A DNA stretch of 62,277 bases, the filler included, from Platydemus manokwari (lineage: Eukaryota), in the NCBI GenBank assembly GCA_037951405.1. It is 5 parts of 5 records of this genome, joined end to end, with 100 filler letters (N's around TTAATTAATTAA, not from the genome) between each part and the next. Parts side by side here need not be neighbours in the genome. Positions count along the whole stretch, not along the records: positions 42,722 to 62,277 come from JBBMOY011789171.1; 4 more parts are not named here. The stretch is one strand, 5' to 3'. The notes below the pieces were generated by a model, which saw nothing but the letters and a program-made list of their open reading frames with translations, was not told where the DNA came from and made no database searches. The translations under genes and the position numbers were made by a program. Each line of letters begins with the position of its first letter. Positions within the stretch are counted from its first letter, which is position 1. Shown here piece by piece: positions 2,414-62,277 of this stretch.

Positions 2414-5400
2414 CTTCAAAAAATAATCATTTTTGTACATCGATAATTCAATAAATATTGGATCAATAATAAATGTCAAATATTCCAATTTTTGTACAAG
2501 AAAAATAATTAATCAAATAAATGTCAAACCAAAAGTAAATGTCAAAACTGGTGTAAAGATGGGAAAAAGTAAAGAAAAATGAAGGAAAGTACATAATTGA
2601 TTGAAGCGTTATTAATTTTGCTGTTAAAATATATTTATTAAAAGGTCAAACTGCTTATTATATTAAGGTTATTGATTAATAACCAGTCTCCTGTATCTTG
2701 GATCTATCAAGTAGCATTATCCAGGTCTTGCTTGTCATATTTTCGAACATTAAAGTTCAGGATCTCTTGAGTCTTCTCAGGTAGTTACTCCAATAACATT
2801 TTGTGCTGTTATCTTTGTCCACAGTAACAGATAGTAAATTATATATAAAACAGTTCCAAATCCTGAACATTAAAACAAGCAATGAATTGACATTATTTTT
2901 ATTTTAAAGTTTACATTGGCCTTTAAGTATCTAAGCTTTCAGGTAAAGTTATTGAGCAGGGTTACTTTAATACTGAAGTGCTAGAATTTAATCAGTAATA
3001 ATAGGAAATAAATATAAATTTATGTTGCAAATCTATCTGATGACTGTATTTTTAAAAGAAAACTAGAATTTAAAAATTTATATTTTTTACTGAATTTAGC
3101 TATTGAATATTTTAAAGTAGTAGTAGAGTGTTATAATAAAATTTTAAATACTAAAAAACTCCAAATTAGTTAGCCATATATATTTTTTCAATTAATTACT
3201 GATATGATTGTTTATTATTAAAATTTTTTTTATCTGTACATCTCAACATTCTTAGACAACTAAATAAACTTGTTATTGTGGATTTCGACATGTTTCAATG
3301 AGATCAAAACAAAAATATGATTTTTCTAAAAATTTATTTATTTTCAGTAATACAATTTTAATTCCCCAACTAAAAAACCTCTTCTGTTAAATTATTCAAT
3401 TTTCAAAATCCCAGAAACATTCTGATTATCTTTTTAGGGTCAATATTAATAGTAAATTTCATGAAATTCTGCATTATCATTTCTCTAAGACACTCTCTTA
3501 ATAAATTGGTTGGCGTCTTGTTGTGCTTTAATCACTTGATTATAAAAATATATGCGCTTTTTTAAAATACCATTTTGTGGCTGAATTAGATTGTTTTCGT
3601 ATATGTATGTCTTTTTCATGTCTGACCACTCTTTCTACCCTTTAAGATATTTCTGTATTTTTTCCTGTTTGATTTTTATTAAATACTAGTTCACCATGCA
3701 ATCTACATAAGCGTCCATATTGATACTGGGTGTCTAATCTCAGTAATATTTCCTGAATATCTGATAATTATATTATAAAATAAGCTTTAAAGTAACTTAT
3801 TATCTATTGATACGATGTTTGTCTGATACTGGCTAATGGATTCTTCGATCAGTTCATTTTGTTAATGTGTCAATAAACTCGTTATGTGTCTTCTCAAATG
3901 CGACACTATTTCCAATTTTTGAGTGGATATGTACGCTCAAAATTTTCTTCAGAAATATCATATATGTATGACTTGCTTGATTATGAATAGAATTACAAAT
4001 AAGCTTATTGGGTCTATTATGTAGCGAATTGTACAGTACAAGCCGGAATATGGTGTATCAATTTGGTTCCCCATTGAAGCATTGGAGGCGGCATAATTGA
4101 TAATAAGCTGTTCAGACAGTTAAATTTCAACCAAATTTTTAACACATGATTCCAAACTATCGGGTTTCTAATGGATTCAATAGAGACATAGTCAGACAGA
4201 AAGTCAATTTCAATCAATATAAATACCAATCGAGAATTTGTAACCTCGCGTTCGAATAAATCAAAATCGAAAGATACTGCTTTTCAAATCACTGGAGAAA
4301 CAGAAAGTGTTGTTTTCGAGTATCTGACATTTCAAAATAAAAACTACTGTAGCTTGTGTTCATTAGGTAGTGCAGAAAGTATTCAATTTGTTAAGTATTT
4401 TAAAAATTGGTCATTCATATGCTACCAACTTCCCGATTCAGAAAAATTCGAAGCTGTAACCACTATCAGTCATTTATTTATGAAACGGTATCAAAATTTA
4501 ACTCTGAATCAATCACAAGCATTATACATTGATTACGTAACACTAATGTTATTATTTTTTGAATTATTCTACTTACGTTTTAAATTTTTCTTTTTTAACA
4601 AAAGTTTGCATTTCATGATTTTGATTTGACCAAATATCCAACCTAGAAACACGACTTTCAAAACCAGTTCTCGTGCTGCCATATGGTCAAACAAAAATTT
4701 AATTGTATTTTCTATCTTTCATTTTCAACGTTTTTTGTCATGTCATAATAGTGCTATGTATTTCGGTGATGGATTTTATGCTATAAAATCCGATCAGCTA
4801 ATCTAACCTAGAAAGTGTAAGAAAAATTATTGGTATATGATAAATAGCAAAATTATATATAAATTTATGCGCGCAATATATACGGGTTGACAAATCTCGC
4901 CACTGATCACTCTAATATCTTTAGTCTAAGCATTAACACACACACTAAGACTCGTTGACAAATAATGAACAAGGTAGACTACTACTGATTTCAAATTATT
5001 TATTATTTTGATTGATTCGATTTTGAGTGTGAAATACATGATTGATTTCAACCTTGTCAACAATAATTAATTGTAAATAAAATTGTTTAATTTCAAATCT
5101 AAAATTAAAAATATTTGTAATAAATAAAGTTAATTTGAGATTTAAATATATTATACATTGCATGATCTTATATCTATTTGACTCAAGATTATATTCGATT
5201 AAGATGGTTGTTGTTTTAAATAAATGATAATAAATAAAATTAAGAATTTGACCTTGCACGATTTTAATATTTATTTATTAACCATCTAATTTGTCTGAAA
5301 TTTGAATATAGGTCAACTTAAATTTAGAATTTACTATAGGTGTTCGAACACTTTCGATTGTCTTTGAAAATTTAAAATGATATAAGGTTAAGTTGGAAAT

Positions 5401-42721: not shown

Positions 42722-43949
42722 ATGTCTTTTGTCATCTTCATAAATTTATTGGCTTAATTTAGTTATTTGAGATGGTATTATTTATTGAAATCGATGAATA
42801 AAATCATTTGATCGGTTATCTTATAATAAATCGCTTCTTAATGGTGTTAAACCTTATAATATAAGATGGATTTGATTATTGTTCGTATTAATATAATTCT
42901 TATCTAGGGCTGGTAATACATTTTGCATCGTTTTTTAATTGAATAAGAGTTGTGATTTTTAATATTGATTCTCCCCAAATAATCATTTATTATATCTAAT
43001 ACGACATTTTACATTTGAAAGATTGTGATCTTTGTTTGATATAAATTAATATTATTAAGTGCAATAATAAGATGGACGATCAAGCAATTTATTTTTGAAA
43101 TTTCTAATCTACACTTATGAATAATCACATCGAATTTAGGCAATAAAACTATGCGCGTGATTATCAAATGCAAACTAGTGTACGATATTTTTTATGTCTA
43201 ATATGATTTTTGATTCATCATTATTTTTATTTAACACATAAAAAGTCATTAATTGATTTGATTTCTTTTTTGTCTTGTTCTCAATGAGAATTTTTCTTTT
43301 TTTCGAACCCATTGTGGCTGACTATCTTTTATTTAGAGATTTTTCATTTCAAATTTTCTAATACATTTGTATGTTATTCTTGAAACAATTATTAGCAAGC
43401 AAAACAGAAAATTAAATTACTCAATCACTAATCATGAAAATAAATGTAAATGATTATTGATTTTTTTATTAAGTAAATCACTGTAGATTACTAGGTCAAT
43501 TAAGTCGGTAATAATCTTAATATTGCCAATTTACTAAATCACACAAGTGCTTTTTATCAGTTATTTAAGTTGTCAACCATTTAGCGAATCATTACTATTA
43601 GATGATTGGTTAACAAATATTATCGATTTTTATTATTACAATAAATCTTTTTTGGTGATCAATACTATCATTTCATTACGAAAATACAAATACGAAAATT
43701 GAAATTTCAAAAAATTGTTTATCTTTATCAAATTTATTCTTCGACAATTGTTAAATCAAAAAAACCAACAATTAGTTTGTTCTGTAAACAGAAAGTATAA
43801 ATAGTATCTGTTTATGATTGCATTTCTATTGGTTGTAAGATGGTGTGCACACTAACAGCATTCAAATTACTACTGGTAAAATTTATTCCTGTAACAAGAT
43901 TTTCTATTAAGTATTATGTGAAATTTAAACATTTCTTTGTGTTTTACTA

Positions 43950-44577
43950 ATGGTGGTTTATGAAATTATATTATTGACTGGTAAGTTTCTATGTATATAA
44001 AATTATATTGATTATAAAATAAATTATTTTAACTATCAGAAATGATTAATGATTCAATATAAATATATTTTAATGAGCATATTCATATTTAATTTCATAA
44101 TTTCATTTACTTAATTCGTGTATTTTAATTGAGATAAATTAAGTTTCAGTTATGAAAATTAATTTTATAATTCTCTGCAAATTCAGTTATTTCGACATTT
44201 GTTATTTTATGTCTCAAATTCAAAAAGAAAGAAATCATGTTACCCGATGAAGATGAATGTGAAAATCTAATGCGTTACAACGATCCAGCCGGTGAAACAG
44301 ACACGGCTAATTACGATTTGACAAAATTAATCCCAAATTTACCAGGAAAAGTTATAAGTAATCCAGTGGAATGAATTTTTTGAGATTTATTAAATTATTT
44401 CTGTTAGCAACAATATTAGATCCATTTTTGGTCAGTGAAAAAGAATCCGTCGATAATGATGCTCATTACCCCATTGATTATCCATTGGATTATGGTTATG
44501 AAGGTACTGGAAGTGTGATGGATGATGCAAGCGTTATTGGATCAATAAGTGTCTATTCCACAGAGTCAGACACATAG
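43950..44577 (+). CDS. TM + classical-cadherin-type cytoplasmic domain protein, 123 aa, apparently without ectodomain; exons 43950-43980, 44187-44357, 44408-44577
   Basis: Spliced product MVVYEIILLTVISTFVILCLKFKKKEIMLPDEDECENLMRYNDPAGETDTANYDLTKL...SEKESVDNDAHYPIDYPLDYGYEGTGSVMDDASVIGSISVYSTESDT*. Matches the cadherin juxtamembrane (RENi..YddEGGGEeD..YD) and catenin-binding (P.D.l..ydYEG.GS) motifs. Both introns are phase-1 GT-AG. Confidence 0.78.
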
Positions 44578-46429
44578 AGACATGGAAAATATTTTTATCG
44601 AGCTTGCCATCTGATTGATATTTTTAATTTGTGATGATATTTTAGACCTATTTCTCATTTTTATTAAATTTATTTTTTGATTGTTTTTGTTTTAAAATTT
44701 TCACAATCAATCCACTTACTGTTGTCATTCACGTAGCGTAACAGTTAGGTTCTTGGAAAATCCATGTTATATTTAACCCAATGGAATTAAACGTTTTATT
44801 TTTAATTTTAATTATTTTTCGGAACGTAGTCGCCATTATTATAATGACTCGGTTAACATGGTTTCACATAACGATGTTTTCACTAGAAACCGCTTTTATT
44901 GGAGAGAGGCTTGTATATAGCAGCAATACCAATATTTTCTCATCATCTGCTTGCATCAAGTTGTCGATATATTTCAATACATCGAAATCGAAACAGAGTT
45001 AAAAAAAACATGAATGCAGGCCTGATTGTTAGTGTAAAGGTGATATGCGATTGGATTTCATCATAATTGGATCATAAATTTACATTAGCATTAACATTTG
45101 AATTGTTTGATATTCGTCATTGATTATTTAATGATTTTTAATATCGTCATTTGCAATTATTGGAGGTCAGTCTATTTATAAGAAATTTACTTTTAGTAAA
45201 TTAATTGCAAAATCAACAATATGATATTTATAGTTGATAAAATAAAACGATTTCCACATATTCCATTGAAATCGTATAGGTTTAGAAACTCTATTTTTGT
45301 CTACCAAATAACAAGGAAATCAAATTGTTAAACCAGCTTTTCGAAAATACTTTTGCGAGTTAACCGCGGAATTTAAAATAATCATGGTTTTGAAATCGTT
45401 GTATTGAATTTGGATATCTTTCTGGAAATGACAGTTGAAAAGGTTTTTTATAAAATGAGAGGTTTGATATTAAACCGTAGCTATAAAGGCGATGATTTCA
45501 TGTTGAATGATGTATCTGTGTAGAGCAATTGGATTTTGATATGAAGAGGTTTCACGAGATTCTAAATAAAACAGCATAAGTTGTAAAAACTGTTATTATT
45601 GATTATCAGTCAATCTCAATTTGGTGTATGAATTCATTTTTGTTATTACGATAATCATGAATCACACCGTAAAATTAACATATAATATTATGAAGAATAT
45701 TCATGCATATCATAATAAACCTACCGTTTTAACAAAAATTAAAATTACATATATGTTAAGTGTGAGAATTTTTAATTAATTTATATTTGTTAAGATTTAA
45801 TTCAAATTTTATAAAAAATAATATTAATTTGTTTATATAATTATATTTAAATGTATAAATCAAAGTACAAAGTCCAACTAACCATGATGTATGTATCGTT
45901 TTCCAATTGAATGATAGAAAATATTTGATCGTTATTCTGTCTAAACAAATCTAGTATAAATTTTAAATCAAAGTGACCAGATATGATTCAGTTAAACTAG
46001 TGATTCTTTTGAATTACTTAAAAACTAGTTTGACGAATACAACTATTGTTTATTAAAAGCTCGACAATATTTTGAATAAATGCTGTTGTTTGAATATTTG
46101 GGAATTATATGGAAAATTATTAGTGACTGTACTTCTGATCAACAGCTGATTAAGTATTTCGATTTTCAAGCTTATGATATGAAATTATTTATATTTTAAT
46201 TTCGCTCAATTCCTATAAATCTTCGGCAAGAGATTAGTTACAAATTTCAAAATTATTTTTCTACAAAATTCAAAAGGAATTTGTCAGAACCTTAACCCAT
46301 CTTTCCTTGTTTTATATCAAAGTAAGCCAGTGTGCAGTTCTGTCTGTCGATTTTTCAATTACCTTCAAATCACAACATTTTTAATTTTAATACTGTTCGT
46401 TACACATTTACATCGATATTTATATTCGA

Positions 46430-46730
46430 AATCTGTGTGTAACTTTTTGTTTCATATTTTATCATATTTTGATTCGATCTTTGCTTTTCCATGTTCCTAT
46501 TAAACTTTTAAGTTTTTGCATGAGTGAGATTGGTCAATACCTATGAGTATGTTAATGTATGGCTATGCATACTTTTCCAATTGTCGTTTACCATCTAACT
46601 CCACTCTCAATGGCTGATTACTATGCCTGTAAGATTGTATAGGCATGCAAATGCTTAAAGTGCTGAAACAGAGGTTCTAAGGTGCAAATCTGTTTTTCTT
46701 TTGGTAGAATTTTGTCTCACTCAACAATAT
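46430..46730. mobile_element. Partial copy of the 41.9-kb MITE family
   Basis: Shares TTTACCATCTA..TATGCCTGTA..CAAATG.TTAAAGT..GGTTCTAAG..CTCAACA with 42170-42308. Confidence 0.75.
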
Positions 46731-48112
46731 ATATATATTTTCATTACCTATTAACTCCCTTAGATTCTAGACAATTCATAATGAAATCTTTGTTTATTAA
46801 ATTTAATCTAATAAATTTTTGACAAAGTCAATTATGCACATGGATCAAATATTCGGAAAAAATATTCAGTATCCTTACAGTAGCTAATAAATAAATATTT
46901 CAATTCAATGTTGAAATAAATAAATTTTTTGTGATTGTAGAAGTATATGAACTTATGAATAACTTTTAATTCATTTAAAATATACTATTAAAGATTATAT
47001 TCAACTTAAACATTCAACCAGAATAGCTTTGTTGCATTTGCACATTTGATATAAACGAGGTTTTAAAAGTTGCTTTGAAAATTAAATCTTCCAATACATA
47101 AATATGAAATTCAGGAAAACCAACAATACCAATATAAATGTCATGTAAATCTTAGTTTTTGATACACATCCATAAATGCGGATGTTTATATAAATAAATA
47201 TTCAAAATAACCACATTCATCGATCAATAAATTTATTTTGAAATATTATACAACATATAGAATTCGGGTTTTGCTTTGAAGATTTATTTAAAACCCTGTT
47301 ATATTGACAATATTTTAAAATTTCAATTTTGAAATCGTACTTTGGTTGTATATTTTATGAAATTATAACTAATTTATAAATAAGATTTAAAGTTTCTCAT
47401 ATTAACACTAATTTGTTGCCCAATTTTATTTTCATTTATTATTAATCATGTCTTAAATTCAAATCTCGTAATATTTAAATTTGTTTGAACTAGACTAACA
47501 TGGTGGATGCATAAATAATACATTTCTTAAAAGAAGTACCGGATATATAAATAAAATAAAAAAGGTAATCAAGTTAATTTGACTCAATTATTATATCTTT
47601 AAGTAAATTTAATTTTAAAATTGTTAAAATTTTAAGAACATAAATCCTAATTTAAATTTAGTAATAATTTTATTAAGACAAGTGATATCCATTGATTTAT
47701 TAATGTACTAATTATGTTTAAAAATGCTTATGACCAAAATACTAGTTATGTTCTATCATGAGAAAAATTATTTTTCTTATATTAGATTGTCAATCTGTAT
47801 GAAGCCTAGTTATAAGGAAGAAAATTTAGTTTCAGATCTTCAAAATCAGCTTAATTTTTTATCTATTTATGAAATATAAATGTATTAATGACATGATAAT
47901 TTACAAATTGTTATAATTATTGTTATTATTTATAATATGATCTTTTTGTATATAATAATTACGTCCATCTATGGCTTATGGGATGATTTCAAAATTTGTT
48001 ATACTGTTCTTTCTTTAGTTATATTTCTTAGTTTCATAAATTATTATTACTTTGCGGATGTGTACTTTGTTTACTTTTATTTCTTTTCATTTGTCTGATT
48101 TATATAAATATA

Positions 48113-48917
48113 TACAAGGTGTGACAAAGGTAACGCAAAATCTGAAATTAAAATTTAGATTTTATTCAAACAAAACAAAAACGTCACATCAGTGCATGTT
48201 CAAATAGTAATTCAGTCTTCGAAATGAAGAGCGTGGCTGTTCAAACATTTCTACAGCCTTGAAGGCGTCGACTGGCACACCATTTTGCGTAACTGATTGT
48301 CAACTGATTGTACATCAGTTGTGATTGCTGCAGCCAATTCTTCGATTGTTTGGGGGCTTTCGTTCATACTTCAAGTCTTTCAACTTTTCTCAAAAAAAGT
48401 TCATTGGAGTAAGATCAGGGGAATGCAGTAGCCACTAGATCTAATCACACATTCCAATCCACAAAGGTGGGAATTTTGCATTCAACCACTCTTGTACAAT
48501 AATTGCAAAATGTGGTTTTGCTCCGTCGAGGTGAAAACGATTTGTTCACTACGTCGTATTCATTCGGATAGTATTTAAGGCCAGATACTTAGTCAGTGTT
48601 TTCAAACTTCTTTACGAGTCTTTGAATTGTTGATGGTTGAATTATCTTTTTATCTGACTTTATTTAATTGTTGCACTTGTGAAAGTATTGCACGACCTTT
48701 ATACTATCTTCGGTTGATAGTCAAATCTCCATAATCGATGAAATATACGCCAAAAGTTTGCTTTTTTGAATCCAATTTAAGCTTAACACAAGCAATGGAT
48801 TGATAAAACAAATTTGAAATTCAAATCAATTATAAATTCTCAACAATTTTTAAAAGTATGATTGGAACCATAAAATAATCGTTCATAGATTTTGCGCTAC
48901 TTTTGTCACATTCCGTA
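48113..48917 (-). mobile_element. Internally deleted rosa/DD41D-type Tc1/mariner transposon with both TIRs
   Basis: TIRs TACAAGGTGTGACAAAGGTAACGCAAAATCT and reverse complement TACGGAATGTGACAAAAGTAGCGCAAAATCT. Minus strand FHLDGAKPHF..WLNAKFP..WIG..W..HSPDLTPMNFF with 41 residues between catalytic positions 2 and 3; ends HFED*. Confidence 0.9.
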
Positions 48918-51759
48918 TTAATTGATTATTCCTAAATCTTTATTATTTATATTTGGGTATTATCGTCTATTTAATTTTATAATATTTCTTTTTCTTGTTT
49001 ATTAAATAATGTTTACTCTAGTTATGTCATATCGACTTTTTGTTTTTAATCAAGTCATTTAATTAATTATGTATTAATTTTATTATAAGGTCTTAATGTG
49101 CTTAAAACCTGTCGAAATGGCAATTGACATGTTGGTTCGATAAATTTCTCCGACAAAGAGTAGTAGGGGACACTATTAAATTATAACTTATTGAATCGAA
49201 ATCACCAATTGAAATTTCAATAATGGTAAAGTTTATAAAGGCTATATATTTATAAAGAATACGAAGTACGATTAATAGTATTTTGTTTTAAAAGTTTGAT
49301 ATTAAAAGACTCAAAAGTAAACAAATAAGTAAAATATTTATTTTGACTACAAAACTACTCAACAAGATCAGAAAAAATGTGATTACACCAAATGAATTTA
49401 CAAATTTATTGGCGTATAAATTGAATGGCTCTTTGTAGAGAATTTTTGGTTGTTTGTATCTCTTGGTTTCTGCTAATCATGATTTTGCGTTAAATTTTTG
49501 TAAATCCCCCTAACTTTGTTTTGTTTACTGTTTAATGGTGAATTTCCAATATTGTTTAATATTTTGTTTGCTTTTTTATTGTTTATTTATTATCTACTTT
49601 TTATCGTTTCCCATTTTTTCTGTTTTAACAACTTATGCATTTATTATGACAAGTTGCATGTTTCTATGGTTAACTGGTTTATTTATTTTTGGCTTTGGTT
49701 ATATTTGTAAAATGTTGTTTTTAATTTAAAATAATTTGTTTTGACTGCAATGAATTTTAATCTTAATTTTATATCTAATTATGATTATATTTTTTAATGT
49801 CCTTTTGTTTTTATCTTATATTTTGTAACCTATTATTTTTGATTGCTTTTTCTGTATCTTTATAAGATGAGAGTCATTATTTTTAATCATTATCATTAAA
49901 TTTATCGCACAGAATTTCTAAAAGTTATTAGTACAGTTACAACAATGAAACATCAAACAACTGAAATAAAGTATAATTATTACTTTTAAGCACTATTAGT
50001 TATCATATAATTGCTATTTAGGGTATATTTTTTGAGGTAGGCTTTGAACTACTGATTTGCATAACCGACGCTATATAACATTTGGATATGGTTTTTATTT
50101 TATTTGAAGAGGGTATTAAGGTGGCCGATAAAATTGTTAAATTTGTTACTATCAGTGAAGTCATCTGATCGTTTAATACTACTTTTTTAGGTTCAACACT
50201 GGTAACCTAGTTTAGTTAAAATTTGTAAAATATAACATTAATTAACAACTTAAAATTAGCGCAAAGGAATAAGATCCAATTATAGATTAATCACACATAG
50301 TTCCTGAAAAGTTTTAAAAATACTTGATAGAATCTTCTCATACTAGTATACCTTTTACACAAACAAGTTGCTACTTTTAACAATTATATCTTTACAATAT
50401 TTTTACTACTTTACTAATGGCAATTTTAACGCTGAGCTTTATTACCTTCACAAAAATAAAGTGCTAGTTTTCAAAAATGGCAACACTACTGTTTTGTTTT
50501 GGTTTATATACCAATACAAAGTAAATATATTCAATAATTTCTTTTAAAGGTTATTTGCTAATGCAAAATTTATTTTTCTTTATTTTATAAAAATTTCAGA
50601 AAATTCAGTCTTTTACTAATAATGACTTCCCGAGTATGCTTTCTTATTTTGATTTAAAATTACTTTTAAAATACATTTAGTTGTATTTTTTGTAATTATA
50701 AGCTACTTTAATTGGGATTTATTTGTTTTTGCGTTTGAGTTTATTTTGTAATTAAAATTAGCATTTTTGATGTTAACATTTTGCCTATTCAAAATTTTTG
50801 AGATATCAAAATGTCAAACCATAAATGAATAATATTATTATTAAATTATTAATATTTGTTTAATGTATTTAATCATTTTTCTCAACTTGGTAGGTTTTGT
50901 TAAACGTAAATACTGTCTAAAATTTGATAATTTTAGAACTTGTTTAAATTAGTCTAATTTTTTGTAAATTTCCAGAGCCAAAACTCCTGACCCATTTTCC
51001 AAATTCCTAATATGGACATTTTTGAAACTTGATCTTTCTATTTTTGTTGCTATTAATGGTAGTGTGATAATTTTCCATTTTGTTTTTGATATCACTTGCA
51101 TTCCACAATCTCTTGATCTTCAAAAATTTCAGAAATATTCATCTTGGTTTTCTGCCATAACAAATAGTTTCAGAGTATCCAATGTTCGCTCCTTCAAATT
51201 GATAATATCTTGTACATTTTCACGTTTTTGTTTTCATTTATTGAATGCGTCTATGCGAGAAAACTATCGGTGGTTATCTATTATCTGTGGCGATAATATT
51301 TGCGCTTTGAAGTATGAATCAAACATTGATAGGCGAGTACCATCCTGAAAATCTGTACTGGTTTCTAACTTCTCTAATTTCTTTAACTGGATATTTGTTT
51401 CATTGATTCGTACCTAAGTTATTATATATTAAGAAACATCTTTAGAAACACTTGGGATTTAAATTTTTATTTATTTTTTCATTGAATATTTTTGTACAAA
51501 AATAAACATAAATAACTTTTTTGAGTTTGCTAGGTCTTGATTCTGAATAACTAATAATTGCTGATTCCAAAAGTCGAAGGTTGTAAGCTTTATTTCTAAT
51601 TCAGTTACTAATCTTTACGACTCACAAAATAATACAAATACAATCAAACTTGATTTGCAAACGACACTCGTACTACTCAGTACTACGCTAAAATTCGATA
51701 CAATGTCCCAAAAGACGTAAACAAGACTTGGTTTTTTTTACATCGATATTTATACTCAA

Positions 51760-52030
51760 GATCTGTGTAATTTTTGTGTCATATTTGTATCACATCTTGA
51801 TTTGATCTTTACTTTTCCATTTTTCTATTGGGCTTATAAGTTTTTGTATGCGTGGGATTGGTCAATTCTTATGTGTGTTGTTGTGTTGCTATGTCCCTTT
51901 TTCCAATTGTCGTTTAACTAGAGAACAATTACAAGCTATTGAGCTCGTATGAAATGCGGAAATCTTTATTTTATAATTATAAACAAGATCCGCGACTTCT
52001 GGATTCTGTCTTTGAAATCTCACTCAACAA
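51760..52030. mobile_element. Partial copy of the 41.9-kb MITE family
   Basis: Similar to 46430-46730 (ATCTGTGT..GATCTTT.CTTTTCCAT..GATTGGTCAAT..TTTTCCAATTGTCGTTTA..TCTCACTCAACAA). Confidence 0.65.
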
Positions 52031-55000
52031 GTTTGATTTATATGATTTTAATGATAATAGTAACTTCATTTTATCAAAGTTGATTTTAAAATTTTTCAAC
52101 TACAAGGAAATAAATTTGACGATATAATATGTTCATAATTATAAGTAGATAATTTATTTTACCAGTTGATTAATTTTTTTGGATTTTTTTATAATAATTT
52201 TTTTATCTAATCTAATTTTTATTATTTTTTAAATCGGATCTATGATCTAATTTTTTATACGGTTTTCTTTTGTAGTTTTTGTTCAATAAATTTTGATAAT
52301 TAATATTGGTTTGAAATTTTCGATAGTTAATTAAACTTTTTCAAAATATTTCAAATCTAAAGTTCACGAGTTATTTATACATTAAATAAAAACATGTATG
52401 AAACTTTTTATTGGAGTTCAACTTGTTAATATGATGACGTGCGTTAATAAAATTCTACTGACTTCTAATTTTCATTGCATTTACCTAAACATAAATGTGT
52501 AGCTCATTACTCAGTAATGTCGAGTCCGGAACATTCCTATGGAAGTATGGACTTTTGGAATCTGAGACCACTGTTTTAATATTTATATAAATGCAGTTAT
52601 TATAATGGATCAATAATTTAATGAAGTTTTCAATTCGGAAAATACATAACTACACATACACAGGAGTAAACTATGTTGCAAACAATGATATATTATCAAT
52701 TGAAGTCAGTTGAAAGAATCAATGTATTAGTTTTTGAGTTATTACAGAGCTGATTAGCACTTTGGAAGTTACTAAAAGTTTCAGTCGCAAACTTCGGTTT
52801 TATTTACGCAACAGTAATAAGATTGGGTTTTAATGTAATACGTTATAATTAAAAATTTATTTAAACTAATATCAATTTAATCCAGATTTAATTCGATTTT
52901 CCTTAATATTAATGAAATTTTTATATTATTATTGCAACTGTATTTATTTATAGGTATTGGTCGAACATTATTTATTTAATCAATAAAACCGCATTAAATC
53001 TGTTAACTCCTAAAATGAGATTGGACTCATTTTTACATTTTTCTGTTTTAAAATAAGATTATTCATTTATGAATATAATGTTAAAAAATTCAAAAAAATT
53101 AGAAAATACTCAGCATTTCGAAATTATAAAAAATAAATAATGAAATTTCATAATTAGTAGCAGGTCAAATGTCGATAAATAGAAGAAATCGATGTTGAGT
53201 AAAATCAAATACGTAGATTGTAAGATTTCAAATTTGAATACCGATAAGCTCGAGAAATACACGAAGAAATAATAAATTCCATATAACATACAAGACATCA
53301 AAAAATATGCAAAATTAAAGTTCGATAAAGTAAGAGTAAAAAATCTGAATTTTTTATGAAAGTTATGCCAGAGGATAATTAATATTACCAGACTCAAGAA
53401 TAAGTTCAGATTTATAAAATTAGCCTTGAGCATTCCAATTCCCGGGCATTTTCTGTGTTCCTGTGTAACTTACAATTGATTAATATTGTTAATTTCTGAT
53501 TATCCTTTATTGATTCTTGTGAGATATTGTATCAAGATTGTGTTAATTTCTACTTGTCATTCATATTATTAATTTTTGTGCTTAAAAATTTGTGATATGG
53601 ACCTCTACGCATAACAATTTTGTGTGACTAAGATTTCTTTGTGCTTTATGACTGTAATACATAATTTTTCTGTTCTATTGAGTTGATACTGTACTATAAC
53701 GTCCTCTAAATATTTCCTAGAGTTTCTGGAGTGGTTTCTGAATCTGTTATATGGATTATTAATTTATTTCTGTCGATTTTCGTTTTTTTGTAGATAACGT
53801 CCATGCGAATCTCTATTGTAATAGTTTGTAATGTAAAATTGTGTATTTGAATATCTAAATTGTAACAGAAAATTAGTTTGTGTCACATTTATCAATGTTA
53901 TATAATAACTCGAATATAAAAAGATTAAAGCTTTATTTCACGATAGATACAATAAAAAATAATCAAATAATTTATGCAAGACATTTTAAACGTTAGTATA
54001 ACTTGATTATCAAATATTAGTAACCCGAAATGTATAAAAATATCTGAAGGAAAGAGTAATTTAAAGAGCCTATAAATTTTCGCTATTCGGTAAACTTTGT
54101 TGTAATAAGTTACAATTGAATATTTCCCTTATAAATAATTTTATCTGATTTATTATAGATAAAATAAAAGAAATAAAATTATTACTCATCATATTTGGCA
54201 GTTTTAAATCTTAGTTTTAAAAAAGTACTTTCCTAGGCTTATAAATTTTTGTGTTAACCTCTTTGATAACTTGGGTATTTATATTTGATTTTATTATTGA
54301 TCTCAAAGTTGTTTGTTTATTTTTTATTTTGTATGTTGGGACGCTATCCTAGTGACCAATGAATGTTATTTCCATGATTTTCGGAAATTTTGTTTGTTTT
54401 GTTTGTACATTACTTTTATAAGTTCATCGATTTATTTAAATAATCGAGATTTTTCTGGTGTTTGGTTGCTAAAAATTTCGTTTATTTTAAAGATTCATTT
54501 AGACATTGGAAATTTCCGTTAGAAACTATTTATAAACTCTATGTATTCCGAAATACTTTATAATATAATTTACAATATGAAATTACAATGTTATAATGTT
54601 ATCTGCCATGTATTTCATTAAAAAACTATTAATTCAATTTAATAATACATAAAAGATAAAATTTATTTTTTCTTGATTTTCTTCAAAGCGATGTCAATTT
54701 AAACAATATTTACTTTCCTTTCTGATGTTTTTATTGAATGATGAATAAAAACTAATCTACATTTCATAGCACATGTCTACAGTTGTGATCATTCGCTCCT
54801 TTCAACCGATTCTTCTATATTATCCAATCACAGGTACAGGATATTTATACATGGTTCGGACCTAAAATTTTGTTATTTTCTATAAGGTTCAGCAAATACT
54901 ATTCTTTAGAATTATTATTAATACTTTGTTTATTATGTTCACTTCACCGGCTCTGTCTGGTATCCTGGACTTCTATGCTTAATTTGAAGTCTGACTCATG

Positions 55001-55169
55001 AATTATCTCATAATAATTATGAACCTTTGTATTACAATGTTATACTTGTGGTTATGTGTTTACTGTTCAACTTGTACTATGTTATTTCTAAGGGGATTAT
55101 AAATTAACATTTTATCAGTAACACACATTTCTTTTTTCAAGCACAAAGTTGTCATATATTAAAATTTTA

Positions 55170-55570
55170 GAAGAACAGAGCGAATTCAAGTCTTTCTTTT
55201 GAATTTCTCGAACCACCCGGTGTGGTTCTTGCGCCGTATTTCCTTCGTCTGCATCCTCCTTCAGGAGGTCATTGAAGACGGTAGTTGTTTTTTCGCAAAT
55301 TATGATTTGGTCAGTGTCTCGAGCTCTCCATCTTATCGTTCACTCCGGACATTCTTTTCGAAATAACAAAGACCTTTGAAAGAGTCATGGGTTTTAGGGC
55401 TTCCTTTGTTTTTCATATCGTACCTATTGCAGATGGGTTACGGCCATATTCTTTGGTTAGATCATCCAAACACATTCATTTTTCGTACTTTTCTATTATC
55501 TTTTGCTTTGTTTGTATAAACAAAACATCTCTCTTCTTACCACTTTTTCTTATCATTTCTTGGGATCCAT
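55170..55570 (-). mobile_element. Tigger/pogo transposase N-terminal (CENP-B-type HTH) remnant
   Basis: Minus: MDPK..KKRDVLFIQTKQKIIEKYEK*MCLDDLTKEYGRNPSAIGTI*KTKE..IICEKTTTVFNDL..GWFEKFKRKT*IRSV. Confidence 0.85.
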
Positions 55571-58500
55571 AGTTAATAAAAATGTAACATAATTTGACAA
55601 ATTTAAATCTTTATTAAAATCTGAAAACTCATCTATGTAAGCAAAATTAAGTATTATGTATTTTAAAATTTTCACTTTTCGTATCCTCAAATTTCTTTTG
55701 TAACCAGAGGTAATATTTTTTCTAGAAATTTGTTCGTAACCTAAAAATTTCGTGTGTAGAGTCTTTTCTAAGTAGATGTACCACTGTAATATTATAAAAA
55801 ATGTCTGCTTTTGAAATTGTATTACTTTGTTATTTTATATTAATGGAACATGATAATTTAGTTTAGTAAAACATGAAACAAGAACTCGAGATCAGTTCTA
55901 GATCACTAGATTATTTTATTAAAATTAAATCTTTGTGATTAGTTATTAATTAATTATCGTTGTATTGCTTGTTTTTGTTCTGAATCTCACCAGAATAGCT
56001 CTCGTATTTATACTATTTTCCTGATAGGTAATGCTATAAAATTTTTAAAATTATTGTTACTTAAATTCGTAAAATCCTGAAAAATTATAAAACCAATAGT
56101 GTTCAGAGTTCGTATTTGAGAAAAACCTGAATTTTAAATTTATTTTTATGAATAAATACAACGACGGAATTTTGAACTTAATCTATGATTATAAATATTA
56201 AAAATACATACCATCGGTTAAGCTTGTAAAAATTTTAGTTAATGTTTCTAACGGCTGATAGAGGATATGATTAAATTTAGATAATGTAGTAGATTGCGTG
56301 TAATGTTTAGTTTCTAATTATCGACATAAATATATCATAAATTTAATATAATGTAAAGGAATTATTTGTTTTTAATAATACTGTTACTCATGCAGTTATA
56401 AATGATAATATCAAATATCCTATGTAAAGTTGCAGAATTGTGCATTGATGTATATAACAGTGATATCAAGGATGAATCTAACTGTATCCAGATTTTGGTC
56501 AAAAACGATCTTGGACCTATAGTGATAACCGTTAATGGTATCCTACATTCGTAACATTTCTTTAGGTAATTAATGTCTCCTGGATTTATTATCTCGTTAT
56601 GATGTTGCTTCTATTATTTGGAAATGTTTTTTGTGTTTCTTCTTATTTGACGGTAATTTGTTACAATGATTGATTATGTTTTGATTGTCTTTAATACGTA
56701 TAAATATGAAATCCAACCAAAGATACGAAGTTTTAGGTTACAATCGGCATATTTTCATGGAACCATGATTGCTCATGTTGTTGGATGATTAATTTAGAGT
56801 TATGAAATAGTAATTTTCTTTCATTAGATATGTTTGAGCTGCGTGCCTTATATTATTTCAAAATTCTATGGTTAATTTTTTTTATTATTAATTGATCGGT
56901 TTGAATTATATCATAGAATTGAATATCTAAGTGCCATTATCGATTGTTACTAGAAATTTCTACAATTATGCTGATTGTAACTCAAATTTTGAAGTGTTAC
57001 AAGGTGCTGTCTCTGTTTACTCTAAAATCTTTTATTCTAGAATTATATTTCAAATTTTTATTATCTCTTCCAATCTAGAGTAATTAAAATTAACTTTGGT
57101 TTAAATTATCGATGATTTTATGTAATTTGATTTTAGTAATGACTTATTTTATTATGGTTTTGTTGTTCTTTGATCGCGTAAACTTAAACTTAAAATTCGA
57201 AATCTTTTCTCAAATTCTGGTACTTCCGACGGTTATAATAATTTATGAAATATAAACATTTAATCTAATAAAAAAACTGAATAAAAATGTAATATTTGTG
57301 ATAAAATTTGTAAAATATCCAGGGTTATAAAGGCTATTTAAAATCTGTATTACACATCAATAATTATAATATAAATCATAATATTAATAAAGTAATAATT
57401 TAATTAATATGCAAGGTCTGTTATAATTCATACCCTACCGTTATTGTTATTTCAATATCTGACTCTGCTTCTAAAATTGGTTATTCATTAAGAGAAATTA
57501 CTTAAATAGGTTCTATTTAAATCATACCATGCAAGGGTGAACTCTAAATAAAGTTATCGTGAAGTGTAAAATCAATACTGTATAAGGTGTAGGATCATTA
57601 ATCTATTGACTGTAAAGCTATAAGATATAGCTAAGATAAATTAAGATTATTGCAACTACACCAGCTACAATAAATGCAAATTAAACATTACTTTGTAGTT
57701 TTCTGTTGAAATGGCAAAATGCACTGTTTTACCTCTTCTTTTATACAATCTATACGGCTTCGATAATAGATTAGCATCATTAACACTTATATATTTAAAT
57801 TTACATGTATAATTTCATACTCCTATTAATACATCCTTTGATATATAATCCGATATTTATTATTTAGGTTAAAAATGTACAGTTGATTTGTTTTAGCTCT
57901 TACAGCGTTATGTAATTATTTTTGTTCATTAATTTAGTAATGTGCCGCTAAAATTGGCGTTTATTATTTATTTGTCTTTCACCTGGCTTATTTTTCAGCT
58001 ATAATGATCTATTTTTTAGATTTCTTAATTATTGTGAGTTTAGTTTTTATTCAGCTTAAGATCATTTATTATTATCCAAACTAATTATTGTTTAGAATTA
58101 TTTAAAAATGAAACTTGGACTCGGTTTTCGTTTCACGGGAAATAAAAGGGATTTATTAATTATAGTAAAATTCGTCCTAACTATTTTATAAAATGCTGAA
58201 GATTGCGAGATTAGCTGTCTATCTAAAAAATATATAATTATTGAGTGATCCATTATAAATTGCTTAACTCAAAGACTTCTAGAAGTTTTCATATTAATAG
58301 TTTCATGAGATTAGGTTGTAGCTAAATATCTAATTACCACAGAAATTTTTATTTTAAAGGAGCTAAATGTATGAATTGTAGAATTGTTTATATAGTATTT
58401 TATGGCTGAAATTGTACGGGATTTATTATATTTTTTCTTTTCTCACTTTCCTTAAAAAGTTAATGTTTTATGATCAATCCATATTGATAAGTTTGCTGCT

Positions 58501-58960
58501 ATTCAGATTTAATTTATCAAAAGTTCATGTTATGATTAAACAAAAACACCATCTGTTTACTTGGATAATATTATGCTTTATGCGGTAGAAATAAGTTGTT
58601 ATTTCAGCAATAGGTTAATTATACTAGTCTCAATTTTATTTTTGTTTTAGGTCCTTTTAATGGGACTATCATCTCAAAATGTCCTGGATGTATAAACAAA
58701 TTTCTGTAACAGATGTGGTTATTTATACCTCTACTTTACAATCACAACTACACTAGTTATACTACTAGCACTATGCTTTATAGAGCAAATTACTTTTACA
58801 ATATCACAATTGCACTTGTTGCAAGAAATCAGAAACCACACTACAGAAAAACCATGAGTATACTAATACATGGTTCAGACACACTGTATAAACCAAAATA
58901 TATTTGTCCATAAATACCACTATTATTTGGTTGAACATCCTTTAAATCTTATTAATTATA

Positions 58961-59925
58961 TGTTATTGAAACCCGTGGGGTTGGATTATTCGGTGATAAT
59001 TTAATAATAAATCAAGGATTTTTCAATCGATAATTTACTATATTATTAGATGTGAGACCGTGAATTAGAGATTGATCTTTCCATCAATATCTGATACTTC
59101 ACAGATTAATTAGGTTGCACGTATAATATAAATATTAAAAACAATAAAAGTATGATAAAATTCTTTATTATAATAACAATTAGCAAATGTGCAATGCGAA
59201 TATATTTTAGAAAGAGAAGCTTTTCGTACCCTGAAGAGTTTTATCAGTGATGAAAAACCGCCAGAGGGAACTTAATGGCGCCCCACTGTGGTATGAAAAC
59301 TAAAGAAATTTGATTTTAATTCTCAAAAATTCAATTACGACTTTGCGAGTTATTAGTGACTGACAACGAATCTCCTTTCGGAGAATGATATCAGTTGATT
59401 AGTTGAAAAAATTAAGTTTACTATTTGAGAATATATCCGTTGTTGAACAAAGGTTGATCAAAGTGATTTGTCGAACACTGAATATATTCTGAAGTGATTC
59501 TGGAACTTGTTGAAACTCGAATGTATAATAATCGTTGAACGTTGAATAGATATTGAAGTTGTCTTGAAACTCGAATATATGATCCTGTCAGATTAGTTCG
59601 GTTTTGTTGCGAAAATACTGGATTTTACTTTACAGTGATTTGGGATGTGGGCGCATGATTAATATTATACTTAATTTGCTAATTCCTTTAGCAATATCCA
59701 ACGTTGTCATGGCAATTTGATTTTATATTTGAATTTCTATGACTATGCTTATTAATGCCATGGTAACGTGGATTAATAATCATTTTTCGAAATTTTTATG
59801 GCTATTATTAATATATTTTCGCCCACATTCCTAATTTTTAATTAATGTGGGTTTATTATTTATTATTATTGCGTGATATATTATATTATAAGGCTTGCAG
59901 CCTGCGTGGGTCTATTATCCTGACA
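58961..59925 (-). mobile_element. LTR, copy 2 (965 bp); 3' LTR of a minus-strand element running off the window end
   Basis: TG...CA termini; homologous to 40763-41598; immediately preceded on the minus strand by a polypurine tract AAAAGGGGAGAGATA (plus 59926-59940). Confidence 0.9.
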
Positions 59926-60739
59926 TATCTCTCCCCTTTTAAGATTTTCGTCCCGTAAATTAGGACAAAAAAGAGAGGAGGTAGGGTCTCGACAAACTTT
60001 GACATAGAATAGATTAATACAAAACTGAATACGATACTGTTCAAAATAAAATCATGTAAGCACAAAATAACTGTCAATGATAACCAAAAGTAAGATAATG
60101 GTTAATGAATCACAATAGAATAAAGAAAATTGTCACAAATTATGAGTTAATTGTCACGAATCATGATCAGATAGTTTATAGTTTGCAGGTAATATCCTTA
60201 TCTTCTGTCATCCACTGTGTCCTCGTCCTCACCTCCTGTTAGATTCATTGAAACTCGGGATCCTGAAGTTTGGGTTCCGATACTCCAGGAACATGGTTTG
60301 TTTGGTTTTCTTATCAGTATAATGAACGCCTGTTATGCGCCATTCATGGTCGTTCTCTCGAATTACTTTGGCAATTTTATAATGTATCTTGATTTTCTTG
60401 GGGTACAGTTTGTTTGTCTTTTTTGGTATATTTGGGAGAGACCAGATACTTCTTTTTTCGGATGTGATGGTGGTTTGCTGGACGCACTTGGTACGTATTC
60501 CTCGGAGTCCATATCGACTTAAATTTCTTTCTTTTTTCTAATGTTTCTTTTTGTTCATATTGCTTGGGAGACTTGGTACCATAATTGGGTCTAATTTCGT
60601 TAAATCGATTCTAGGTGCAGTGGCCGCATTAATTGTCTGTATTTTTCTCTTGTTGACTTATGGCTTGTTTGGTTTGTTCCTCATTTATGATCAAGTCACC
60701 CATTAGTTCATCTTCTTCGATCTCCATGGTGTTCCCAAT

Positions 60740-61620
60740 CACATTCTACATCTGATCCTGCCATGTGGATTCCAGGTTTAGGTACACCTATCTTATTACT
60801 TTCGCATTGTTTCTGCGATAAGGTCCGAAAGCCTATCTAGAACATAATTAGGCATAAAGGCCCTTCATATCTTGGACTATTTATAGGCTTTGCTGGTAAC
60901 TAAACCTCTACTGCCGATTAGATGATCTGGGTTGATTCCACATGCTTCTAATGCATCCTCTATTTTGTATCCAATAATTACTTTCCCTTGAGTGATTTCC
61001 CTCAGTTTGTGTTGACAGAAGACTTCGTCTCACTGTCCTATAATAACTTTTTCGGTGATGATATCTGATCCGTCGTTCTTCCAATGTCGAATGCGTCGCC
61101 GAGGTGCGACTCTGGAATTCATTATCACTTGTTCCTGGTAGTTTAGCACAGTCATAGCAACTAAGGAATTTTCCGTTTCCTGTCATCCCGTCATGTTCGC
61201 TGTAGCGACCATGACTGCACTAAGGAATAAGATCTTTGTTCATAGTTCGGTTTCGGACATTGGTGGCCTGATAAATGAATGGAAGAGATTCACTTCTTGG
61301 AGTGATATTGGCACATTTGGTGCAGCTGGTGAAAAGGGTACGTATGGTAAATATTCGATGACGAGTGTAGTTGTTGCAATTAGGATTTCTACCTCAGCCT
61401 TGGTCAGTCGCTGATAGCACTCGGTGATTTCTAGGTTTTGAAAGGGAGACATTTTTATGAGTTGGTCGAGTCCACGCATTCATATTGTAATGGGTTCCCC
61501 TGTAGTATGCAAGTGGCGATGTTGACTTGCTCCTACGAGTAATGGAAGTATCCTGTCCATAGCATATTTGCCTGGAAGCTCTACGATAGCGGCGGTAACC
61601 GACCGTGGTCCACGACATCC
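60740..61620 (-). pseudogene. Retroelement accessory ORF containing a REX4/ISG20-like DEDDh exonuclease fold (decayed)
   Basis: Reading through stops in the 61240-61479 frame gives KILFLSAVMVATA..NSLVAMTVLNYQEQVIMNSRVAPRRRIRHWKNDGSDI..CQHKLREITQGKVIIGYKIEDALEACGINP..SRGL, then a frameshifted GIHMAGSD (ExoIII HxxxxD). Confidence 0.7.
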
Positions 61621-62277
61621 GAATTTTAAATTTTTTGGGAGACTTGTTTGGTCTGCGAAATACTTGATGCTGTCTCCTCTCTCGTTCCTGTATAATTAGT
61701 TTGTAATAGGCTCTGCCGGGTACCTTTCGGTATCATATTTGGTTATCTTTTGTGTTGACGTTGAGGGGGAGACAGGTAGGTTGTAGTTTTGGAGTTGAAT
61801 GATATGTTTGTAAGTCTGAAAATACAATTAAATTAATAGGCAAGTAATAGTGTTGTTTCCAACAATATTGTATGCCTGGTTGAACAATAGGTCACCAATA
61901 ATGTTCGTTCAACTATTAGTGATGCCTTTAATGATATAATACGGATATAATACATTAGTCCGCCTGGTAGAACGAGGATCATTAGGGAAGTTCATATGAG
62001 AATTGTGGAGTTTTCGTAACTCGAGAGTTGAGCGGTTCTTTAGCAATCTGACTCCAAAGGATTGCGGATACTAGCACTTACTACTAGCATTTATGCCAAC
62101 TATATAATAACAACACAACGTATATAATAAATATTTATTGATTTATATGACAGGCGTACAAGCTGAATAACGATTAGAGATATACAATCAGTGTACGAGC
62201 TGAATAATAAATAATGAATTATCAAGGGTTCTAAAAGAACAGATTCGATGCTTATCCCTAAAGATGAGGGGTATTGT

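What the first reader, a model, noticed from the sequence alone, without database searches (positions are those of the whole stretch)
43790..44577. Apparent 'headless' cadherin: a 123-aa TM + catenin-binding tail mini-gene
Seen: three exons splice into a TM helix, a basic stop-transfer stretch (KFKKK), a p120-binding-like juxtamembrane motif and a beta-catenin-binding-like core (PIDYPLDYGYEGTGS + Ser-rich). The first coding exon has an in-frame TAA (43926-43928) 24 nt before the ATG (43950) with no AG in between, so no ectodomain exon can be spliced on through this exon. A TATAAA (about 43796) and a possible 36-nt 5'-UTR intron (43876-43911) lie just upstream, and no cadherin repeats were recognised in the 1.2 kb back to the gap. 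The tail also stops early, without the usual terminal WGPxFxxLAxxY motif. Established: engineered ectodomain-deleted cadherins act as dominant negatives and sequester p120/beta-catenin. Inference: a natural membrane-tethered catenin decoy or scaffold that could tune adhesion or Wnt/beta-catenin signalling.
Basis: partly seen in the sequence, partly recalled or inferred. Interest (0 to 1): 0.8.

Follow-up and report, generated by a model that had tools for sequence, protein, structure and literature searches.

The report
Conserved cadherin tail gene without ectodomain
A tiny three-exon gene encodes only a membrane anchor plus a shortened cadherin-type catenin-binding tail, and a distant relative keeps the same start codon, splice sites and early stop under purifying selection, so it looks like a genuine natural "headless" cadherin, though expression and binding are untested.

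Summary
Exons 43950-43980, 44187-44357 and 44408-44577 splice into a 123-aa protein: an N-terminal membrane helix, KFKKK, a cadherin juxtamembrane-like stretch, and a perfect beta-catenin groove-binding motif (D91-x4-Y96-x2-E99-G100) followed by a Ser/acidic cluster.

The only database relative is a 1489-nt genomic contig (L001) from another, GC-richer species. It has the same ATG exon, all four splice sites in the same phase, and a stop two codons later. Amino-acid identity is 78%, differences by codon position are 16/15/79, and pN/pS is about 0.14 with synonymous sites saturated.

Upstream of the ATG, both species have in-frame stops and a frame-breaking indel, but share short non-coding blocks. 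No cadherin repeats occur in the 19.5-kb piece or in L001.

Weak points:
- Pfam PF01049 scores below its cut-off.
- The p120 GGG motif reads PAG.
- The C-terminal third of a normal tail is missing.
- No RNA data exist and the taxon is unknown.
- Sequence upstream of 42722 cannot be seen.

Verdict: probably a real, selected, ectodomain-less cadherin-tail gene. The catenin-tether function is inferred.

The parts
43796..43801 (+). TATAAA, a possible TATA box about 150 nt upstream of the ATG
   Evidence: Read directly. It is not aligned to a TATAAA in L001, which has TATTTATAT about 10 nt further on. Weak evidence.
43806..43852 (+). Conserved non-coding blocks: ATCTGTTTAT (43806-43815), TCTATTGGT with an inverted CCAAT (43825-43833) and TGCACAC (43846-43852). 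Candidate promoter elements.
   Evidence: Pairwise alignment with L001. Introns and flanks are otherwise unalignable although synonymous sites are saturated.
43885..43905 (+). Best-conserved non-coding block, ATTCCTGTAACAAGATTTTCT. Likely a 5'-UTR or core-promoter element.
   Evidence: blastn 43885-43986 vs L001 552-660, E 5.7e-4. A 2-nt indel between the species excludes coding.
43926..43928 (+). In-frame TAA 24 nt before the ATG
   Evidence: No AG occurs between it and the exon-1 donor. L001 has an in-frame TAA at 582-584.
43950..43980 (+). Exon 1 coding part: MVVYEIILLT + G of codon 11 (first half of the membrane helix); donor GTAAGT at 43981
   Evidence: Conserved in L001 624-654 (MVLYDIIFVT, donor GTAGGT). 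The 8 nt differences fall 2/0/6 by codon position (binomial P 0.02).
43981..44186 (+). Intron 1 (206 nt, phase 1)
   Evidence: GT..AG. Not alignable to L001 intron 1 (251 nt).
44187..44357 (+). Exon 2: second half of the TM helix, KFKKK stop-transfer, and the juxtamembrane cadherin-like stretch (LPDEDECENLMRYNDPAGETDTANYDLTKL)
   Evidence: C-cadherin is the top PDB hit. 81-83% identical to P0001 of L001.
44358..44407 (+). Intron 2 (50 nt, phase 1)
   Evidence: Donor A|GTAATC and acceptor TGTTAG|C. The position is conserved in L001 (62 nt).
44408..44577 (+). Exon 3 coding part: beta-catenin groove-binding motif D91-YPLD-Y96-GY-E99-G100, a Ser/Thr-acidic cluster, and stop TAG 44575-44577
   Evidence: Pfam PF01049 E 0.001. 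The motif definition is from PMC13245172. The L001 tail ends 2 codons later.
44600..44625 (+). Short conserved 3'-UTR block (GAGCTTGCCATCTG...ATATTTTT)
   Evidence: Local alignment with L001 1330-1358. Weak evidence.
44663..44668 (+). ATTAAA, a possible polyadenylation signal 86 nt after the stop
   Evidence: Pattern search. Not verified.

Best explanation
This is a self-starting three-exon gene for a 123-aa single-pass membrane protein. It consists only of an N-terminal signal-anchor helix (residues about 2-20), a KFKKK stop-transfer cluster, and a shortened classical-cadherin-type cytoplasmic tail.

Shown:
- The exon structure, the start codon, all four splice sites and the early stop are conserved in a second, strongly diverged species.
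- The reading frame is under purifying selection.
- No ectodomain can be joined through exon 1.

Inferred:
- The helix inserts N-out/C-in. The flanks carry net charge -1 on the N side and +4 on the C side, like microsomal P450 anchors. The tail therefore sits in the cytoplasm in native cadherin orientation with essentially no extracellular part.
- The tail binds a beta-catenin-type armadillo protein through D91 and E99 of the intact D-x4-aromatic-x2-E-G motif, and is tuned by phosphorylation of the following Ser/Thr-acidic cluster.
- It thus acts as a non-adhesive membrane tether or sink for catenin, a genome-encoded equivalent of the E-cadherin CTF1 fragment or of engineered ectodomain-deleted cadherins.
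- Binding is probably weaker or differently regulated than in full cadherins, because the C-terminal helix/cap region is absent and the p120 GGG motif is degenerate.
For: - Gene model and 123-aa product.
- L001 carries the same ATG exon, donor and acceptor positions and phases, and a stop 2 codons later.
- 96/123 residues are identical. Nucleotide differences are 16/15/79 by codon position (P about 2e-16 vs equal thirds). pN is 0.128 vs pS 0.94. Exon 1 alone is 2/0/6.
- Upstream of the ATG there are in-frame stops in both species, a 1-nt indel, and no AG in the window.
- A translated comparison finds only the three exons conserved.
- Conserved non-coding blocks lie just upstream, suggesting a local promoter or 5'UTR.
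- The only PDB matches of the whole product are classical cadherins, collinear from the TM onward; the exon-2 profile again ranks C-cadherin and the E-cadherin tail first.
- PF01049 is the only Pfam hit to the whole product and to exon 3; exon 2 alone gets only weak non-cadherin hits (DUF7625, E about 0.08).
- The beta-catenin motif is matched exactly in both species, as defined in PMC13245172.
- TM hydropathy is 2.4-2.9.
- The locus is single-copy (k-mer depth about 12.6) and the sequence is confirmed by the Logan contig.
Against: - There is no expression evidence at all, since no RNA run holds it.
- There is only one comparison species, and the taxon is unknown.
- The piece ends 1.2 kb upstream of the ATG, and L001 ends 620 nt upstream, so far-upstream exons spliced directly to 44187 cannot be ruled out.
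- Pfam scores (17-19.5 bits) are below the 24-bit cut-off, and the exon-3 profile alone finds no cadherin in PDB.
- The p120 motif has PAG instead of GGG.
- The tail lacks the C-terminal third. From my memory of E-cadherin deletion studies, that part is needed for stable catenin binding.
- The start context is not Kozak-like (pyrimidine at -3 in both species).
Confidence: 0.6

Rival explanations
1. These are the 3'-terminal exons of an ordinary full-length cadherin gene. The main mRNA splices a far-upstream exon (end of the ectodomain plus the first half of the TM, phase 1, beyond 42722) onto 44187. The ATG exon is either an alternative internal first exon giving a minor short isoform, or is not used.
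For: - The piece stops 1.2 kb upstream, and the Logan contig ends 41 nt beyond that.
- The surrounding 17 kb is gene-poor and repeat-bearing, so long introns are plausible in this genome.
- No RNA data exist to exclude it.
- Exon 2 alone carries only half a TM helix, as expected for an internal exon.
Against: - Exon 1 is conserved as coding sequence, with the same ATG and donor, in a species whose synonymous sites are saturated.
- Conserved promoter/UTR-like blocks sit directly upstream.
- The other two introns are only 50-250 nt in both species.
- No EC-repeat coding is detectable in 1.2 kb (window) or 620 nt (L001) upstream.
- A long isoform would need a second copy of the half-TM exon.
Confidence: 0.17
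2. It is a real headless membrane protein, but it no longer binds catenins. The cadherin-derived tail has been repurposed, for example as a phospho-regulated acidic scaffold or a sorting/endocytic adaptor site, after losing the GGG p120 motif and the C-terminal helix.
For: - The p120 groove motif is degenerate (PAG) in both species, and the C-terminal region is absent in both.
- Similarity to cadherin tails is sub-threshold in Pfam.
- The most conserved stretches include lineage-specific ones (KLIPNLPGKVITTILDPFLV) with no counterpart in E/C-cadherin.
Against: - The beta-catenin groove-binding motif D-x4-Y-x2-E-G and the following Ser cluster are exactly retained in both species.
- The JMD flank (ENLMxYND...NYDLxKL) also remains recognisably cadherin-like.
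Confidence: 0.15
3. It is a non-functional remnant: a partial duplicate or decaying 3' fragment of a cadherin gene, or an assembly artefact.
For: - It lies in a gene-poor, AT-rich, repeat-containing region.
- No expression data exist.
- The tail is truncated at both ends relative to a cadherin.
Against: - pN/pS is about 0.14 and differences by codon position are 16/15/79.
- The ORF is intact, with conserved start, splice sites and stop, in two species with saturated synonymous divergence.
- k-mer depth is single-copy and the independent contig has 0 differences.
Confidence: 0.04

Closest known systems
Cytoplasmic domain of classical cadherins (C-/EP-cadherin 1q55, E-cadherin tail 1i7w)
   Same: The order is collinear: TM helix, basic stop-transfer, acidic juxtamembrane stretch ending in YDL(S/T)xL, the beta-catenin motif D-x4-aromatic-x2-E-G, then a Ser-rich acidic cluster.
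   Different: There is no signal peptide and no EC repeats; the protein starts inside the TM helix. GGG is replaced by PAG. The tail stops right after the Ser cluster, so the C-terminal helix/cap (DYDYL..WGxRF..LA..Y) is missing. Pfam scores are below the cut-off.
Engineered ectodomain-deleted cadherins and the natural proteolytic fragment E-cadherin CTF1
   Same: Both are a membrane-tethered cadherin tail without an adhesive part. Such constructs act as dominant negatives and disturb endogenous cadherin localisation (PMC2199905, PMC4133371, listed).
   Different: Those are man-made or produced by cleaving a full-length protein, and they keep the complete tail. Here the form is encoded by its own gene with its own ATG, is conserved between species, and has a shortened tail.
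[quoted passage not shown] 2002/2004, as cited in bioRxiv 10.1101/164012)
   Same: It is a natural case of a classical-cadherin-type cytoplasmic domain without EC repeats.
   Different: BbC keeps a large LamG/EGF ectodomain that still mediates adhesion. The present protein has essentially no extracellular residues.
T-cadherin (CDH13)
   Same: It is a natural 'half' cadherin.
   Different: It is the reciprocal case: an ectodomain on a GPI anchor with no TM or tail (PMC13659743).
Dachsous-type cadherin tails
   Same: They are reported to carry similar p120- and beta-catenin-like motifs (PMC13245172), so the tail's ancestor need not be a type I/III classical cadherin.
   Different: Dachsous proteins are giant, with many EC repeats. 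No Dachsous tail was available here for direct comparison.

Membership tests
Cadherin superfamily / classical cadherin | At least two extracellular cadherin (EC) repeats (criterion used in PMC13245172) | tested here: not met
   An in-frame stop lies before the ATG with no acceptor after it. No DxNDNxPxF, DxDxGxN or LDRE motifs occur in any frame of 42722-62277 or L001. No conserved coding lies upstream. Sequence beyond 42722 is not visible.
Cadherin superfamily / classical cadherin | Single TM helix followed by a basic stop-transfer, with the tail cytoplasmic | tested here: met
   Kyte-Doolittle 19-mer means are 2.4-2.9. KFKKK is conserved in both species. The TM aligns with the C-cadherin TM. 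Topology is inferred from the positive-inside rule.
Cadherin superfamily / classical cadherin | p120-catenin groove-binding motif x-x-[ED]-G-G-G-E | tested here: not met
   The sequence reads Y41-N-D-P-A-G-E47 in both species, so only one of the three glycines is kept. The flanking JMD is still cadherin-like (E 0.007).
Cadherin superfamily / classical cadherin | beta-catenin groove-binding motif D-x-x-x-x-aromatic-x-x-E-G | tested here: met
   D91-Y-P-L-D-Y96-G-Y-E99-G100 is identical in L001. HMMER aligns it to DSLLVFDYEG of C-/E-cadherin.
Cadherin superfamily / classical cadherin | Pfam PF01049 (cadherin cytoplasmic region) at or above the gathering score | tested here: not met
   Scores are 17 bits (whole protein), 19.5 bits (exon 3) and 16.1 bits (P0002), against a cut-off of 24. 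It is the only family hit for the whole product and for the exon-3 pieces; the exon-2 pieces get only weak non-cadherin hits.
Cadherin superfamily / classical cadherin | C-terminal helix/cap region of the catenin-binding domain (DYDYL..WGxRF..LA..Y) | tested here: not met
   The stop comes right after STESD(T). It is conserved within 2 codons in L001. No WG..F or F..LA..Y motif occurs in any frame downstream.
Membrane-tethered catenin sink (works like CTF1 or dominant-negative cadherin) | Physical binding of beta-catenin and/or p120 by the tail | not testable with these tools
Membrane-tethered catenin sink (works like CTF1 or dominant-negative cadherin) | Expressed as a short transcript starting near 43800-43949 | not testable with these tools
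   No RNA run holds the locus. The only holder is a set of DNA-type contigs.

The most novel reading that the evidence does not exclude
An evolutionarily maintained, stand-alone gene encodes a 'born-cleaved' cadherin. It has a membrane anchor plus the minimal beta-catenin-binding core and nothing else. The animal uses it as a natural dominant-negative or buffer that sets the pool of catenin available for junctions versus Wnt signalling, a regulatory device so far known only from engineered constructs and proteolytic fragments.
Probability: 0.35. Interest if true: 0.75.

Novelty: new variant of a known kind. Interest (0 to 1): 0.6.

Why it matters
Ectodomain-deleted cadherins have been a laboratory tool for thirty years, and cleaved tails (CTF1/CTF2) are known signalling intermediates. 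A conserved gene that directly encodes such a molecule would show that animals also use this principle genetically.

It would give a clean natural system for separating the adhesive and catenin-buffering roles of cadherin tails. It would also define experimentally the minimal tail that selection keeps: the TM, the JMD flank, the D-x4-Y-x2-E-G motif and the Ser cluster, without GGG and without the C-terminal helix.

It is also a caution for annotation. A 123-aa, three-exon gene with a 31-nt first coding exon is invisible to most gene finders and absent from protein databases.

Tried and rejected
RNA evidence
- The look-up of sequencing runs found one holder only, not on record as RNA.
- Read laying could therefore only confirm the DNA.

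More relatives
- Word searches with the whole product and with exon-2 and exon-3 profiles found only P0001 and P0002, both on L001.
- The exhaustive HMMER search of 1.84 billion representatives with the exon-2 profile found only P0001 at E <= 0.001. No full-length cadherin with a close JMD is in that library, and no other short homologues.
- Two metagenome scans found nothing.
- Two ESM-Atlas searches gave no usable hit.

- After that, only exact exon translations and database proteins were sent to tools.

Taxon and neighbours
- Rfam found nothing.
- Pfam on 18 candidate ORFs of the piece found nothing significant.
- A paper search for the run accession of L001 found nothing.
- The organism stays unknown.

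Other checks
- The exon-3 profile against PDB gave only noise, with amylase on top at E 0.3.
- A downstream extra exon carrying the WGxxF/LAxxY motif was looked for in all frames and not found. No conserved donor lies before the stop.
- Structure and complex prediction were not run. The tail is expected to be disordered, and no catenin partner sequence was admissible.

Rejected readings
- The pseudogene reading.

Full report
**The sequence.** The piece (42722-62277) is very AT-rich, at 21-31% GC over most of its length.
- ATG is at 43950, and exon 1 runs to 43980 with donor GTAAGT.
- Exon 2 is 44187-44357, after ...TTCAG, with donor A|GTAATC.
- Exon 3 is 44408-44577, after ...GTTAG, ending in TAG at 44575-44577.
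- The spliced CDS is 372 nt, encoding 123 aa.
- The in-frame TAA at 43926-43928 is real, and there is no AG between it and the exon-1 donor. No upstream coding exon can therefore be spliced into exon 1 in frame.
- TATAAA is at 43796-43801.

**The protein.** Residues 2-20 form a strongly hydrophobic helix, with Kyte-Doolittle 19-mer means of 2.4-2.9, followed by KFKKK.

phmmer of the product against all 177,635 distinct PDB sequences returned only two hits, both classical cadherins.
- C-/EP-cadherin 1q55: E 0.0015. The TM+JMD aligns to 714-773 and, collinearly, the catenin-binding core aligns to 807-846.
- E-cadherin tail 1i7w: E 0.09.

A two-species profile of exon 2 again ranks C-cadherin first (E 0.007).

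Pfam gives PF01049 (the cadherin cytoplasmic region) as the only hit for the whole product and for the exon-3 pieces. The exon-2 pieces draw only weak non-cadherin hits (DUF7625, E about 0.08; DIM, E 0.12). The PF01049 scores are below the 24-bit cut-off:
- 17 bits for the whole protein
- 19.5 bits for exon 3 (E 0.001)
- 16.1 bits for the relative's exon 3

The exon-3 profile alone against PDB gives only noise.

So the tail assignment rests on two weak, independent, collinear signals plus motif evidence. PMC13245172 defines the motifs.
- The beta-catenin groove-binding motif is D-x4-aromatic-x2-E-G, whose D674 and E682 contact K435 and K312. The product has D91-YPLD-Y96-GY-E99-G100, an exact match. 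It is aligned by HMMER to DSLLVFDYEG of the solved cadherins.
- The p120 motif is xx[ED]GGGE, with the three glycines critical. The product has YNDPAGE, which does not meet it.

The tail ends right after the Ser/acidic cluster (..YSTESDT*). No WGxxF or LAxxY motif exists in any frame downstream.

**The relative.** The word search found two short Logan ORFs, P0001 and P0002. Both lie on one 1489-nt genomic contig, L001, from a different run and a much GC-richer genome (GC3 of 0.56 vs 0.27).

L001 has the same gene, and all four splice sites sit at the same codon positions and phases.
- ATG exon at 624-654 (MVLYDIIFVT, donor GTAGGT)
- exon 2 at 906-1076
- exon 3 at 1129-1304
- a stop two codons later than in the window

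The products share 96 of 123 residues. The 110 nucleotide differences fall 16/15/79 by codon position (P about 2e-16 against equal thirds). pN is 0.128 and pS is 0.94, i.e. saturated and inflated by the GC shift. The pN/pS ratio is about 0.14.

Exon 1 on its own shows 2/0/6 (P 0.02), so it is coding in the ATG frame. Introns and flanks do not align. A translated comparison of every L001 ORF against the whole piece finds only the three exons.

**Upstream of the ATG.** Both species have in-frame stops: the window at 43926, L001 at 582-584. The two sequences also differ by a 1-nt indel, so this stretch is not coding.

Despite saturated synonymous divergence, several short blocks are conserved:
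- ATCTrTTTAT
- ATTGGT (an inverted CCAAT)
- TGCACAC
- a 21-nt block, 43885-43905
- ATTTCTTT just before the ATG

I read these as promoter or 5'-UTR elements of a local transcription start. That is an inference.

L001 has no GT donor there, and the putative intron interior is the best-conserved non-coding block.

**Sequence quality and context.** The one public run that holds the locus gives a 3141-nt k-mer contig at depth 12.6. It matches 42722-45821 with no difference. The locus is therefore single-copy and the TAA is not an evident error, although that run may be the source of the window.

The remaining 17 kb contains no recognisable gene. It carries two high-copy repeats and a GC-richer block at 60.2-61.8 kb with unassignable ORFs.

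**What could not be done.**
- No RNA run holds the locus, so there is no expression or splice evidence.
- The exhaustive protein search with the exon-2 profile found only P0001.
- Further word searches, two metagenome scans and two Atlas searches added nothing.
- The taxon is therefore unknown. I could not find the lineage's full-length cadherin or further short orthologues.

**Interpretation.** Shown: there is a conserved, selected ORF that starts with Met inside a membrane helix and encodes a cadherin-type tail without any ectodomain.

Inferred:
- N-out/C-in insertion, because the flanks carry -1 on the N side and +4 on the C side.
- Beta-catenin binding through D91 and E99.
- Regulation by phosphorylation of the Ser/Thr-acidic cluster.
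- A role as a non-adhesive catenin tether or sink, like CTF1 or engineered ectodomain-deleted cadherins (PMC2199905, PMC4133371).

The lost GGG motif and the missing C-terminal helix argue that p120 binding is doubtful. From my memory of deletion studies, beta-catenin binding may also be weaker than for a full tail.

The main rival is that exon 2 is also, or mainly, spliced to far-upstream ectodomain exons beyond the piece. Exon-1 conservation and the adjacent conserved non-coding blocks make a self-starting short transcript more likely, but only cDNA can settle it.

**Comparison with what is known.** The nearest natural precedent I found is amphioxus BbC. It lacks cadherin repeats but keeps a LamG/EGF ectodomain. 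T-cadherin is the reciprocal half-molecule. Full-text searches for headless, tail-only or ectodomain-less cadherins found no natural gene of this kind.

It fails the defining test of the cadherin superfamily, because it has no EC repeats. I therefore file it as a cadherin-tail-derived protein, a new variant of a known kind, rather than as a cadherin.

Noticed in passing
window 45670-45940 and 46340-46720: Two short stretches have k-mer depth of 400-3700 against a baseline of about 12.6 in the only run that holds the locus. Many contigs skip 70-134 nt around 46426-46573. These look like high-copy dispersed repeats (MITE-like?) with internal length variants. No tandem structure is present in the window.
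   Followed up: partly
window 60190-61760: A GC-richer block (34-43% vs about 25%) carries several 70-112-aa ORFs on both strands and no Pfam hits. Examples are 61243-61479(-) and 61483-61695(-). It is possibly a degraded mobile element or an unrecognised gene.
   Followed up: partly
window 43914-43919; L001 573-578: Both species have a minimal upstream ATG-stop (ATGTGA in the window, ATGTAA in L001) 35-50 nt before the main ATG. If the transcript starts upstream of it, this may be a start-stop uORF. The two do not align exactly.
   Followed up: no
window 44600-44625; L001 1330-1358: A short conserved block (G A x CTTGCC xx CTG ... ATATTTTT) lies about 25 nt after the stop codon in both species. 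It may be a 3'-UTR regulatory site.
   Followed up: no
window 48192-48590 (- strand): A locally GC-richer stretch has protein-like short ORFs, e.g. 48254-48370(-) SMNESPQTIEELAAAITTDVQSVDNQLRK. It has only weak sub-threshold HTH-type Pfam hits (E 0.014-0.16). It may be an exon of an unidentified gene.
   Followed up: partly
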